The notes under the pieces are model-generated. The model worked only from the letters and a program-made list of their open reading frames with translations. It was not told the DNA's origin and did not search any database. Below, one piece after another: positions 13,225-17,700 of a stretch of DNA of 46,174 nt. How positions within the stretch are numbered: the stretch's first letter is position 1; each line of letters starts with the position of its first letter. The DNA is from Hyphochytrium catenoides (Eukaryota; Protista; Hyphochytriomycota), in assembly GCA_900088475.1 (NCBI GenBank), contig FLMG01002556.1, forward strand, positions 1-46,174, read 5' to 3'. Both the position numbers and the translations under genes were made by a program.

Positions 13225-14715
13225 TCAGAGGCCAGCGAAAGGATCCAAGGAGTCGAACGGAGAAGCGGGAGGGGACGATGCTCTAAGAGCGGAGCTTTGG
13301 AGGTGAGAGACGACAGGCTGCTGATCATCCCTTGAGGAAGTGGTTGGCTGACTTACACTGCTGCCTAAGAGATCCAGAAGAGAGTCGCCGCTCTCACTAC
13401 TAAGCGCGATGGAACCCGCTGGGCCGTGCCCCAACAAGTCACTGAAAGGGTCCGAGGCAGATACAGAAGTGGTAGGCAGACTGCTCCCAGGAAGAGGGGC
13501 AAACAGATCCAAGCACTCTGAAGCTGCACTCTTTTGGTCGGGCACTGTCCAAAGTAGTTCCTCGTCAAAGGCAACAAGGTTGTCGGACACCGCCACTGTG
13601 CGCTGTTCCCGAGAGTGGCCACTTGAACTACCGGATGTCACAGCTAAATCACCCTGGTGGTCCGCTCCATTGCTGCTGGTAGTAATGGGTGGAGACGACC
13701 GGTCGCTAGCCAGTCGGGTGAAGTCTCCGAATCCTGGAACCTTCAAATCAGTCAGAGCAGCATCCAAGTCCAGCAATGTCTCGTGAGCATTCTTGCGCGC
13801 AGCTGCGATAGCTGTGGTCAGCAGTCTTTCACGACTCTTTCCAAGTATTCCAAGCCCAGTACGTGGGCTGACGGGAGATGATAAACTTAGAAGAGTATCG
13901 GCCGAGTCGTTGTTCCTTGACGACGCGAAAGCATTCAACCCCTTTCGATACTTGCATTGCTCTTTGAACGCTTCTAGTGTCGCCGGCTGACTCTCCAGGA
14001 CTGCCAAAATCTCTTGTCGAGTACTCTGAGCTACGACAGCAAATCCCATGTAGCGTGCGTTCGTCGCAACCCAGATATGGTCGAACAGCATGAATGTTTC
14101 GCTAAAAATCTCATAGAAAGCTAACAAAGGGATCGTTAGCTACTAGAAAGGGCTCTTGTCGAAAGGTTTGAAACGAGACCGTCACATATATGAGCCCGGC
14201 AAGGAAATTACAAGTCAAAGGAGCAAATTAAGGAAACTAACCTCCTTCGTCTTCAAACCACGGCCATACTGCAGCCCTTTGCTCCAAGAGTTCCGCCGAG
14301 TAGTTCCAAAATAGAGAGCAAACCATGCTCGTGACATTAATTCCTGCAGGACAAACGGGATAGGTACTTCTATTGGCATCTGGGATCTGTTCCTTTTGCA
14401 TCGTCCTCATTTCCATAGGGTAAGTCTCGCTAAAGTAGACAAGACACCGAAGTGCCAGCTGACCCCCAGCCCTGAAGTCAGTCGTGGGATCTGGCCGCTG
14501 AAACCCCAAATCCAGCCATCCTTGGCCTTCTCTTTCAAACTCGGCAGAGAGATAGACTGCTCTCCATAACCTTTCTAATAAGCCTTCAGAATCTGGGTCT
14601 CCAGCCACCATTGGCGTTCGCAGGAAATCAAAGCAGCGTCTAAGATTCTGCATTGCTCTTGGGCTTGGCCGTACATCTGGCCGTCGAAGTTGCAAAGTTG
14701 TGGCCTTCTGCATTT
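13225..14715 (-). CDS. ELMO/CED-12 (ELMOD-type Arf/Arl GAP) domain exons plus acidic low-complexity tail; probably the last two exons of the BEACH gene
   Basis: Translation shows [10 protein letters not shown]...[29 protein letters not shown]...[14 protein letters not shown], then [27 protein letters not shown]. This matches the ELMO-domain signature WxxxGFQxxxPxTDFR. Confidence 0.88.
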
Positions 14716-17700
14716 CTATAATGGAATTTACAGTTTGGTCAGTTCTCGATCAGAGCAAAAAGCCATGTCGGTACTAGAGCCACAATCTCTGAATCATCCG
14801 ATCTGACCGTCTCGCCATACTCTACCAACCTTGGGCGGACGATCTCGCTCCCTGATTATCGCATGTTCATCTCTGTCACAATCGTACCTCCTGGAGTCTT
14901 TGTCTTTCTGTCCCACAGCCAGTCCAAGGGTTGTTCTGCGGAACTTTGTGCGATAAGATCTCTTTTGGCTGCAGCGGCCACAGCCGCAGCTTCCTCCGCC
15001 CTTGCCATCTTGACAGCTTTCGCTTCATCGCTGGTCCCCAACCCAAAATGCAACGCATAGCTCACCAAGAGACCACCTTCTAGCCCTGCTAGAACACACC
15101 TCTCGTCTGGCGAAAGGGCAATGGTGCGCACTGGCGCGAATGGTCTTGTCTCAATACGCCGATGCACTCGCAGACTCCTTGCATATCTGATATCTATCCC
15201 TCCTTTAGCCCCCGTAGTCGCTGTTAAAATGTAGGTAGANNNNNNNNNNNNNNNNNNNNNNNNNNNNNNNNNNNNNNNNNNNNNNNNNNNNAGATACAGA
15301 GAGTGTAACAACTGCCCTAGCCGTAACGAATGCACCAAGCAGGTGGACTGTCCAGAGGCACTCACCACGGTATCCAAATCAGCATGCACTGCCACCGCCG
15401 TTACTTTTTCTCCGTGCCCACATAGCAATTGCCATGGGAGGGAGCCCACGATTATCTCAACCTTTCCAAAAAGCCTTCTCTTGGTTGCTCCAGACAGGGG
15501 GAGGGCCCAGACGGACACAGTTCCGTCATCGCTGCCGCATGCCACTGCGAGATCACCCGTGACGGCGTCAAGAGAGCCCGAGAGACAAGAAATGGGAAGC
15601 TTGTGGAACGGAACTCTTTGCACCACTTCTCCTTCATTCGCCCAAGCAATCCGCCAGCAGCCATCCCAGTAGCCCCCTATAACAGTTCAGTGAGTATCAG
15701 CTACTAATCACGGGGTAATGGCGCTTCCACACGGTGTGAATCATGCTCTGTAGACAGTCACTACCGCTAGGCACATTGCCACTGCCTCTAGTGTCTCACG
15801 TAACGTTCGAGTAGTCAAGCATGCAATGCTTGTGATGTTTCCCTAAGCGTTGCCTTCTGTCTATTAAAAATAGTTTCTTTCTTCTGACAAAACATTTCTA
15901 CTCCTGATACTGGTTTGGACCACTTACCGACTATTAGCTGTTCATGAAAGAGGCAGGCAGTATGCTTGACATGGTTGTTCACCCTTGGCTCCAGCTTCCA
16001 GCGTTGGTTGGTGCACTCAATGGTAAACGGAAAACCCCTAGTGTCAGGTGTGTCTCCCTGGTATTTGTACGCCACGACGTTGCTCTCATCGTCAATGGTG
16101 AAGAGAGCGGTCTGATCTTGAGAGAAAAAGATGTTGATGATATCGACCTGGTGGCAATTTTTAATCTCCTGGCGACGGATCTGCCGTCTGGATGTTAGAC
16201 CTGCGAGCGCGTGGGAATTGGGATACCTGTGTTGCCAACAAAACGCATCACGTGAGACAGACTGGTCACCCACGTCATTGAGAAGAAGGATTTACAGAGG
16301 CTACGATGGGACTGTAAACGAGCTTTTACGCTATGGGGCTAAAGCGAATTTGGCCGCTGAAGGGCTAGGTACTACTTGACATCGTGCGGTCATAAGGAGT
16401 CAAAGGAGGACAAGCAAGGTCTTACCGTTGGGCAAGTGCTTCTTCTTTGGAGAACCTTTGGGGATGGGCCTTGGTGAAGAGCTGAGACGGTGTCTGGCCA
16501 TATCTAGCTATCTCCCTCTCTATGGCAATCCTAACGTCCTTGTTCTCTATCGACTCCAAGTTTACGCAATTTTCATAAGTTAGGTAGTAGAATACGTTGT
16601 CAGCGTCAACAGCCGTCTGGCCCTGCTGCTTATAGCCGAAGATCAGGTCAATCCAGAGATGGAGCTTGGACGACACGTAATCACTTTCTAGAGCCTCTCT
16701 GTTAATCCGAACAAAATCTTCAGCGCTTGTAGCCCAAGGCGGGAGGATGACATTCCCCGATTGTCTAGCCCTCCCACGTGCTTCTCCTAGCGTTAATTTG
16801 TCTGATGCACCTCCGAGCGGCAGTCCATTTACGTTGGTCAAGAACTCCGGAAGGTAGAACCATTCCGGAGTCAGCTCTTTCACGTCGTGTTGGCTCTCTA
16901 TGGAGCTTTTCCAAGCATCAGCCACAGATGAGAAGATCTTGGCTGGGGGAGGGAGCTTCCCTTTCCCTTGAGATATGGCACACGACGTGTAGGGCTCTAG
17001 TCTCAGGAGGTAATACAGTACCACGTCGGGGTTGCTGTAATGACTATGATAGTGAAATGGAGGAACCTCTCGCTTCTCTTCTGACATAGCCTGAAATTGT
17101 TGGCGGAATCTCTTCACCCGGTCTGGGTTTTGGGCGCCTTTCAGCAATTGGACGTGAGATGCAGCAGCTGAGTGAAGAAAGAGGGAGTAGAAGACCTATA
17201 ATCCTTTCGATAACTTACCAATCGGTCTGCTTAGGTCTCTATAGGTAGCTGGACTGTCCAGATCAATTTCAACGCTCTCATAATCTCTGATTATCCAAGG
17301 GAACACTGGATACTGGCTTAGATCGTTGTAACTTCTACCAGCAGCAGTATTGAGCAGCATCAAATATTCAAAGTTCGAGAGCTCCCGCCTCTGCCATTTT
17401 GCAGTCCAGTTTGTGAACCTATTGGTTGCAGAGAATCAGGATATGACCGGTAGTAGAGGGTCAGAGCTAACACATCTAATGTGAACAGGCTGGGCCTGCG
17501 AGGAGATGAAATGAAGAGCCGCGGCATAATCGCCCACACAAGCACGATATTGAGGAAAGCAAAACGAACACACCAAAATGGGACGAATGCTCATCAAAAT
17601 AGCGTAACCTTCAGAGACAGGGGAGCGTAAGTGTCATACCTAACAAACTTGTCTGGAGTGGGACAGACACGAGGACAAGTCTTCATGAAGACTGGAGGTT

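What the first reader, a model, noticed from the sequence alone, without database searches (positions are those of the whole stretch)
13225..17420. BEACH-WD40 protein apparently fused in frame to an ELMO (Arf/Arl-GAP) domain
Seen: the WD40 exon ends ...ACT CCA GGA G|gtacga (donor at 14887). An acceptor with a branch-like actgac and ttatag (14716) resumes AA ATG CAG AAG, so G+AA keeps the frame ([14 protein letters not shown]) straight into an ELMO domain. Only ~140 bp separate the unspliced stop from the ELMO ATG, which is little room for a terminator and promoter. Established: BEACH proteins (NBEA, LRBA, LYST, Lvs) normally end in WD40, sometimes with FYVE. ELMOD proteins are Arf/Arl GAPs that need the Arg of the PxTDFR motif, which is retained here. 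Inference: a BEACH scaffold carrying its own Arf-family GAP; I do not recall this architecture being described.
Basis: partly seen in the sequence, partly recalled or inferred. Interest (0 to 1): 0.85.

Follow-up and report, generated by a model that had tools for sequence, protein, structure and literature searches.

The report
BEACH-WD40 protein with ELMO GAP domain
This gene very probably makes one giant membrane-traffic scaffold protein (BEACH-WD40 type) that ends in an ELMO-type switch-off domain for Arf GTPases; the same design is in the sequence databases for every water mould examined, but I found no paper that describes it.

Summary
On the minus strand a BEACH/WD40 exon meets a donor G|GTACGA at 14887. 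An acceptor ttatAG| at 14716 resumes two bases before the ELMO ATG, in frame (TPG-E-MQK). The unspliced stop lies 142 nt upstream of that ATG.

In-frame splicing alone is weak evidence: 18 of 116 local GT-AG pairs are in frame and stop-free. The decisive evidence is comparative.
- The closest relatives of this ELMO domain sit at the C-terminus of 2,500-3,800-aa proteins with Laminin_G/DUF4704/PH_BEACH/Beach/WD40/ELMO_CED12.
- 48 such proteins were found, and every named one is an oomycete.
- In three relatives the whole fusion is one uninterrupted ORF. In Saprolegnia the WD40-ELMO junction lies in one exon.
- The window is colinear with them from 25439 to its last residues (...DPFAGL).
- The GAP motif [12 protein letters not shown] is invariant in 40 orthologues.

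The N gap is not a mis-join. DNA contigs bridge it with 256 nt, which makes 86 in-frame codons; homologues have 68-92 residues there.

No RNA run was listed, so the junction itself is untested. The fusion is likely real (about 0.8). The architecture is common in databases, so the novelty claim fails, although no paper searched describes it. The scan's only other note here is this same stretch.

The parts
23773..25439 (-). N-terminal homology region of the gene (Laminin_G_3/ConA-like and DUF4704 solenoid of NBEA/LRBA-type proteins). The true 5' end is not mapped and is probably near 26.0-26.3 kb.
   Evidence: tblastn of six and then 58 fusion homologues; their Pfam content
17640..17968 (-). PH_BEACH exon
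   Evidence: tblastn; stop-free exon chain
16426..17418 (-). BEACH domain, two exons (17418-17219 and 17137-16426) split by an 81-nt intron
   Evidence: Pfam Beach E 3e-74 and 2e-22; intron table
15292..16226 (-). WD40 propeller, first part: exons 16226-15928 and 15676-15292, split by a 251-nt intron
   Evidence: Pfam NBCH_WD40 2e-16
15240..15291 (.). Assembly gap. It hides about 256 nt (86 codons with 2 flanking bases) of WD40 coding sequence; it is not a mis-join.
   Evidence: bridging contigs; homologue spacing of 68-92 residues
14888..15239 (-). Last WD40 blades plus the conserved linker helix ([20 protein letters not shown])
   Evidence: alignment to 12 fusions; single BLASTP HSPs across the junction
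14716..14887 (-). Proposed 172-nt intron in the WD40-ELMO linker: donor GAG|GTACGA, CTGAC 27 nt before ATAG|. If it is retained, the stop is TAA at 14858-14856.
   Evidence: allelic SNP/indel cluster 14831-14881, as in neighbouring introns
14242..14715 (-). ELMO domain, first exon
   Evidence: Pfam ELMO_CED12 1e-27; tree placement
14441..14518 (-). ELMOD GAP motif [26 protein letters not shown]; the putative catalytic Arg codon AGG is at 14473-14471
   Evidence: sequence; invariant in 40 orthologues; consensus from PMC8483735
14121..14241 (-). 121-nt intron inside the ELMO domain (GAG|GTTAGT ... CTAAC ... TTAG|)
13225..14120 (-). End of the ELMO domain plus a 255-residue Ser/Thr/Pro-rich tail with LLDLL and two DPF motifs, ending SLDPFAGL; stop at 13227-13225
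   Evidence: Pfam; tail comparison

Best explanation
One gene of about 13 kb on the minus strand encodes a neurobeachin/LRBA-type BEACH-domain protein. Its domain order is ConA-like, DUF4704 solenoid, PH-BEACH, BEACH and WD40 propeller. The protein then continues through a short helical linker into an ELMOD-type ELMO domain and a disordered tail with clathrin-box-like and DPF motifs. In this intron-rich genome the linker carries a lineage-specific intron, most likely 14887-14716, and splicing it restores the frame.

Shown: the domains, the colinearity with fused orthologues, and the invariant GAP motif.

Inferred: the ELMO domain acts as a GTPase-activating domain for an Arf/Arl GTPase on the membrane where the BEACH scaffold sits. 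In human cells LRBA needs ARF1/ARF3 to reach endosomes, and LRBA/NBEA tubules carry ARF1 and clathrin adaptors. A built-in GAP would therefore switch off the GTPase locally, timing the release of the scaffold or of neighbouring coats. The DPF/LLDL tail would tether the protein to AP-2 or clathrin-type appendage domains.
For: - Of the top hits to the ELMO exon, six are long proteins, and all six have Beach+NBCH_WD40+ELMO_CED12.
- 48 such proteins were found, and every named one is an oomycete.
- P0001, P0003 and P0004 are single uninterrupted ORFs on genomic or metagenomic contigs. In Saprolegnia the junction is inside one exon.
- The window is colinear with these proteins from 25439 to 13894. 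The spliced C-terminus gives one BLASTP HSP across WD40-linker-ELMO, for example E 1e-81 to P0001.
- Conserved blocks lie on both sides of the intron.
- The window's ELMO domain falls in the fusion clade, with SH-aLRT support of 95.
- The terminal DPFAGL motif is shared.
- The intron's features match five neighbouring introns: 81-251 nt long, G at +5 of the donor, and a CTNAY motif 18-30 nt upstream of the AG.
- An allelic SNP/indel cluster lies in the proposed intron, as in confirmed introns.
- The GAP motif is invariant.
- Literature link between ARF1 and LRBA/NBEA: PMC11449124 and PMC11554844.
Against: - No RNA run was listed for this stretch, so the junction is unobserved.
- The donor has C at +4, unlike the five neighbouring introns.
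- A stop follows 10 codons after the donor and an ATG sits 2 nt after the acceptor, which is exactly what two separate genes would also show.
- In-frame GT-AG pairs are common here (18 of 116).
- GAP activity, its substrate and the motif-partner interactions are untested in any member.
- The AlphaFold model of the relative has pTM 0.43, and the GAP loop has pLDDT below 50, so it gives no information on how the domains pack.
Confidence: 0.8

Rival explanations
1. Secondary gene fission. In this lineage the ancestral fusion has split, so the BEACH-WD40 gene ends at TAA 14856 and an independent ELMO-tail gene (about 456 aa) starts at ATG 14713.
For: There is a stop 10 codons after the putative donor, and the first ATG lies just 6 residues before the conserved block. 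The donor is sub-consensus at +4. No RNA evidence is available.
Against: Only 142 nt would have to hold a terminator, a promoter and a 5' UTR. Every one of 48 relatives is fused. The stretch has all the features of the local introns. No stand-alone ELMO-tail protein of 165-525 aa was found, but that is weak evidence because this genome's proteins may not be in the collection.
Confidence: 0.08
2. The fusion is real but uses another junction, or both forms are made. One alternative is the 14916/14745 pair, also 172 nt. Another is regulated intron retention, which would give a BEACH-only isoform ending [10 protein letters not shown] alongside the fused isoform.
For: Eighteen in-frame, stop-free GT-AG pairs exist. 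The acceptor at 14745 has the better pyrimidine tract.
Against: The donor at 14916 (GTGGGA) and the others fit the local GTAAGT-like consensus less well. No CTNAY motif lies at a suitable distance before 14745.
Confidence: 0.1
3. Assembly artefact: the N gap joins a BEACH gene fragment to an unrelated ELMO locus.
For: An N gap lies inside the WD40 region.
Against: The gap is 350 nt upstream of the junction, not at it. Both flanks match consecutive WD40 parts in the right order and on the right strand. DNA contigs from two runs bridge it with a frame-preserving 256 nt. One DNA contig (X3 record 19) covers 14123-15078, right across the junction.
Confidence: 0.02

Closest known systems
Oomycete BEACH-WD40-ELMO proteins, known only as database entries (e.g. 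Albugo candida CCI40035 / UniProt A0A024G146, Aphanomyces cochlioides KAG9416774, and a 3303-aa Phytophthora infestans protein named 'ELMO/CED-12 family')
   Same: Same domain order from the ConA-like region to ELMO. Same linker helix, same invariant [12 protein letters not shown] motif, and same tail motifs ending in DPFAGL or DPFACLM. The protein tree follows oomycete phylogeny, which points to vertical inheritance.
   Different: The window protein is at most 45% identical to any of them. It groups with two unnamed marine metagenome proteins outside the named oomycetes. It also has an intron in the linker where the relatives have continuous coding sequence.
Neurobeachin / LRBA (animal BEACH-domain proteins)
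   Same: Same ConA-like, DUF4704, PH-BEACH, BEACH and WD40 layout. The model of the closest relative matches the LRBA (1T77) and neurobeachin (1MI1) PH-BEACH structures at about 40% identity, with TM 0.78-0.81. LRBA recruitment depends on ARF1/ARF3 (PMC11449124).
   Different: The animal proteins end with the WD40 propeller and carry no GAP domain and no DPF tail.
ELMOD1-3 and plant ELMODs (stand-alone ELMO-domain Arf/Arl GAPs)
   Same: ELMO_CED12 domain with the GAP consensus WX3G(F/W)QX3PXTD(F/L)RGXGX3LX2L matched at 12 of 13 positions, including the Arg that is essential in mammalian and plant ELMODs (PMC8483735).
   Different: ELMODs are small single-domain proteins. Here the domain is the C-terminal module of a protein of about 3000 aa. 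The residue after the Arg is Ala, not Gly, in at least 90% of the 40 aligned orthologues.
ARAMIS (DIX-ELMO proteins of oomycetes, PMC12077222)
   Same: Another stramenopile-specific fusion of an ELMO domain to a different module.
   Different: The partner there is an N-terminal DIX-like domain, not BEACH-WD40. That paper calls DIX-ELMO the 'third class' of ELMO-domain proteins and does not mention BEACH-ELMO.

Membership tests
BEACH-domain-containing proteins, NBEA/LRBA class | PH_BEACH followed by a BEACH domain | tested here: met
   Pfam Beach E 3e-74 and 2e-22. The PH_BEACH exon is colinear with homologues. The model of the relative matches 1T77 and 1MI1.
BEACH-domain-containing proteins, NBEA/LRBA class | C-terminal WD40 propeller (NBCH_WD40) | tested here: met
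   Pfam NBCH_WD40 2e-16. The rest is colinear with homologues, and about 86 codons are hidden in the gap.
BEACH-domain-containing proteins, NBEA/LRBA class | N-terminal ConA-like/Laminin_G plus DUF4704 solenoid | tested here: met
   tblastn colinearity at 25439-23773 with homologues that carry PF13385 and PF15787. Not scanned directly on the window's exons.
ELMOD-type Arf/Arl GAPs | ELMO_CED12 domain | tested here: met
   Pfam 1e-27, 97.7 bits against a cut-off of 23.3.
ELMOD-type Arf/Arl GAPs | GAP consensus with the invariant Arg | tested here: met
   12 of 13 consensus positions are met, with Arg at 14473-14471. The motif is invariant in 40 orthologues.
ELMOD-type Arf/Arl GAPs | Measured GAP activity on an Arf-family GTPase | not testable with these tools
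   No biochemical data exist for any BEACH-ELMO protein in the searched literature.
ELMO1-3 (DOCK partners) | ELMO domain followed by a PH domain, with an N-terminal Ras-binding domain | tested here: not met
   The Pfam scan of the ORF after the ELMO domain shows only the end of ELMO_CED12 and no PH domain. The N-terminus is BEACH-type.
Oomycete BEACH-ELMO fusion family | Colinear full-length homology, including the linker and the terminal DPFAGL motif | tested here: met
Oomycete BEACH-ELMO fusion family | ELMO domain belongs to the fusion-specific clade | tested here: met
   The clade has 24 members: 19 fusions, 4 short fragments and the window. SH-aLRT support is 95.
Oomycete BEACH-ELMO fusion family | Both parts lie on one mRNA or one ORF | tested here: inconclusive
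   One ORF in P0001, P0003 and P0004 and one exon in Saprolegnia. In the window it needs a 172-nt intron, and no RNA run was listed.

The most novel reading that the evidence does not exclude
The fusion is a 'Rosetta stone'. It would indicate that NBEA/LRBA-type BEACH scaffolds in eukaryotes generally work together with an ELMOD-type GAP that switches off the ARF1/ARF3 (or an Arl) that recruits them. It would also indicate that the DPF/LLDL tail couples this switch to clathrin-adaptor buds. On this reading, oomycetes and their relatives have hard-wired a partnership that is non-covalent and still unrecognised in animals.
Probability: 0.25. Interest if true: 0.7.

Novelty: new member of a known kind. 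Interest (0 to 1): 0.45.

Why it matters
BEACH proteins such as LRBA, neurobeachin, NBEAL2 and LYST are disease genes whose molecular mechanism is still being worked out. In 2024 LRBA and NBEA were tied to ARF1/ARF3-positive, clathrin-adaptor-bearing tubules. A lineage-wide natural fusion of such a scaffold to an Arf-family GAP domain, with adaptor-binding motifs in its tail, is independent evolutionary evidence for that link. It also names a candidate partner class (ELMODs) that could be tested in animal cells. For genome annotation, it shows that the two ORFs here should be modelled as one gene. It also shows that the assembly gap hides about 86 codons of the propeller.

Tried and rejected
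- RNA evidence: no RNA run was listed for 13300-15230. A search of any run type found only three DNA runs plus tiny unrelated runs, and X4 laid nothing.
- Annotation of this genome: exact look-ups of five window ORFs found nothing. A search for a stand-alone ELMO-tail protein of 165-525 aa found nothing.
- ESM Atlas look-alikes of the relative's C-terminus returned only generic WD40 clusters scoring below 0.8.
- The ELMO exon has no sequence relative among solved structures at E 0.01. NCBIfam has no match.
- Literature: six searches found no paper on a BEACH-ELMO fusion. Two papers that might list it are not held: Seidl 2011 on oomycete domain bigrams and East 2012 on ELMO evolution.
- Mis-join at the gap: rejected.
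- The AlphaFold model of P0001 is too uncertain between domains (pTM 0.43) to say whether the ELMO domain docks on the propeller.
- A second homologue search seeded from the marine relative found no named taxa outside the oomycetes.
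Full report
**Observation**

The gene is on the minus strand.
- The WD40 exon ends ...ACT CCA GGA G at 14888, followed by GTACGA.
- The AG of ttatag ends at 14716, and the next exon begins AA ATG CAG AAG.
- G+AA makes a Glu codon, so the frame runs on as TPG-E-MQKATT.
- Without splicing the frame stops at TAA 14858-14856. The ELMO ATG is at 14713, so 142 nt lie between them.
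- The ELMO frame has an upstream stop at 14752-14750 (read). It can therefore only be entered downstream of that point.

Pfam confirms the domains on the successive ORFs:
- Beach at 17363-16422
- NBCH_WD40 at 15626-15292
- ELMO_CED12 at 14713-14237, with its last 30 positions at the start of ORF 14127-13225

**How much the splice signal is worth alone**

Only six GT dinucleotides lie between 15030 and 14856, and GAG|GTACGA is the best of them. However, 18 of the 116 GT-AG pairs give a stop-free in-frame join, so the preserved frame is not significant evidence.

I mapped five neighbouring introns of the same gene by a stop-free exon chain and by homology.
- They are 81-251 nt long.
- Their donors are GTATGA, GTAAGT, GTAAGA, GTAAGT and GTTAGT.
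- Each has a CTNAY motif 18-30 nt before a [ACT]AG acceptor.

The candidate is 172 nt long with donor GTACGA, a CTGAC 27 nt upstream, and ATAG. It fits these features except for the C at position +4.

**The assembly gap**

Six fusion homologues match the sequence up to 15291 and again from 15233, in order and on the same strand. One 682-nt contig, seen in DNA runs X1 and X2, lies with 358 nt on 14882-15239 and 68 nt on 15292-15359, and no part of it is unaligned. So 256 nt lie between the flanks, not 52.

Two bases of a codon are left over before the gap and none after it. That gives 258 nt, or 86 codons, in frame. The three closest homologues have 68-73 residues there, Saprolegniales 79-80, and Albugo 84-85. 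The 30 letters that run X3 shows next to 15292 continue the open frame (translated by eye).

The gap is an unread piece of the propeller, not a mis-join. These runs may be the assembly's own data. Separately, contig X3 record 19 covers 14123-15078, so the junction region itself is contiguous DNA.

**Comparative evidence**

I searched 1.84 billion representative proteins with the ELMO exon. Among the top 28 hits were six long proteins of 1051-3174 aa, each with the match near its C-terminus. All six carry Beach, NBCH_WD40 and ELMO_CED12, and most also carry PH_BEACH and DUF4704. The named ones are Aphanomyces and Albugo.

A length-restricted search seeded from the Aphanomyces ELMO region found 48 long proteins with this architecture. 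They come from Aphanomyces, Achlya, Saprolegnia, Thraustotheca, Phytophthora, Plasmopara, Peronospora, Hyaloperonospora, Pythium, Globisporangium, Lagenidium, Albugo and others. One is even named 'ELMO/CED-12 family [Phytophthora infestans]'. A second seed from the marine relative added no other named taxa.

These are not annotation artefacts.
- P0001 (L001:1663-4818), P0003 (L004:1168-10692) and P0004 (L005:1073-8821, a TARA metagenome scaffold) are single uninterrupted ORFs.
- In Saprolegnia parasitica the last WD40 strand, the linker and the start of the ELMO region lie in one exon (L007:9822-10160).

**Orthology of the window gene**

- The window is colinear with the fusions from 25439 down to 13894.
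- The conceptually spliced C-terminus (15239-14888 + 14715-14242 + 14120-13225) aligns as a single BLASTP HSP across WD40, linker and ELMO in all 12 relatives tested, for example E 1e-81 to P0001.
- Conserved blocks flank the intron site. Upstream is a helix, KKAREEEAEALARA.KRDLL, which reads [20 protein letters not shown] in the window. Downstream is LWIK.GK..MP...L..PCV.G.
- In a tree of 118 ELMO domains the window falls in a clade with SH-aLRT support of 95. The clade holds 19 fusions and 4 short entries (P0002, P0006, P0025, P0161). P0002 sits on a 1250-nt contig. P0161 is a 90%-identity cluster-mate of the full-length Aphanomyces protein. Phytophthora capsici, the source of P0006, also has a full-length fusion, P0189.
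- The tail is shared to the last residues. An LLD[LF] motif, an internal DPFAGND and a terminal DPFAGL or DPFACLM recur in the family, and the window ends SLDPFAGL.
- In a tree of the PH-BEACH-to-ELMO region the named oomycetes reproduce their species phylogeny. The window groups with P0001 and P0004 outside them (support 100, on long branches). This agrees with other agents' unverified notes that the genome belongs to an intron-rich close relative of oomycetes.

**Function**

The ELMOD GAP consensus is WX3G(F/W)QX3PXTD(F/L)RGXGX3LX2L, and its Arg is essential in mammalian and plant ELMODs (PMC8483735). The window matches it at 12 of 13 positions. [12 protein letters not shown] and the following GG are invariant in 40 orthologues, and the residue between them is Ala in at least 90%. 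That degree of conservation argues for a working catalytic site.

The scaffold part is of the NBEA/LRBA type. The model of P0001 matches the LRBA and neurobeachin PH-BEACH crystal structures at about 40% identity. In human cells LRBA needs ARF1/ARF3 to reach endosomes (PMC11449124). LRBA and NBEA tubules carry ARF1 and clathrin adaptors (PMC11554844).

My inference is that the fused ELMO domain turns off the recruiting or neighbouring Arf-family GTPase, and that the DPF/LLDL tail binds adaptor or clathrin appendages. No step of this mechanism has been tested in any member.

**Novelty**

Six full-text searches found no paper that describes it. A 2025 paper lists ELMO-domain proteins as ELMOs, ELMODs and a 'third class', DIX-ELMO, with no mention of BEACH-ELMO. 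Two older papers that might list the pair could not be read.

**Verdict**

The fusion is probably real in this genome (about 0.8, plus about 0.1 for a fusion through another junction or alongside a retained-intron isoform). The exact junction awaits RNA evidence: no RNA run was listed, and other agents working on this genome mostly report the same. This is a new, divergent, intron-bearing member of a family that is present in databases but undescribed in the literature I could search. Interest is moderate.

Noticed in passing
window 15240-15291: The assembly's 52-N gap under-estimates the missing sequence. DNA contigs put 256 nt there, all apparently coding (86 codons of the WD40 propeller).
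   Followed up: yes
window 13225-13990: The disordered tail carries LLDLL, DPFSDLL and a terminal SLDPFAGL. An LLD[LF] motif, DPFAGND and a terminal DPFAGL or DPFACLM are conserved across oomycete orthologues. This suggests clathrin/AP-2 appendage-binding motifs under selection. It is the subject of the separate first-stage note s1-367493.
   Followed up: partly
window 14153-14213, 14831-14881, 16369-16421: Dense clusters of alternative-allele SNPs, plus a 1-nt indel at 14850, appear as contig bubbles inside introns, while exons show only sparse changes. The sequenced organism looks diploid and heterozygous.
   Followed up: partly
window 14745-14916: A second in-frame GT-AG pair (donor 14916 GTGGGA, acceptor 14745) is also exactly 172 nt. 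It would give ...[16 protein letters not shown]... and could be an alternative splice form.
   Followed up: partly
P0151-P0162 (Aphanomyces euteiches CAK entries), P0185, P0186: Public annotations of this family are uneven. Some A. euteiches assemblies split the gene into 210-533-aa pieces. The Thraustotheca model also carries a PIH1 domain, and the Plasmopara model a Mob1 domain (PF03637). These are probably merges with neighbouring genes, since in Saprolegnia the next gene downstream is PIH1 (L007:11388-12624).
   Followed up: partly
window 27480-29300 (-) and 30119-31149 (+): Between this gene and the ARL13-like gene upstream lie ORFs that look like an FCP1/NIF-type phosphatase (DLDETLVHS) and a trehalose-phosphatase-like HAD protein. 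This is judged by eye only.
   Followed up: no
P0001 model, residues 839-857: In the AlphaFold model of the closest relative, most of the invariant GAP-motif loop (residues 849-857 of 849-863) is predicted with pLDDT below 50, while the surrounding ELMO helices are confident. This fits a flexible catalytic loop.
   Followed up: no
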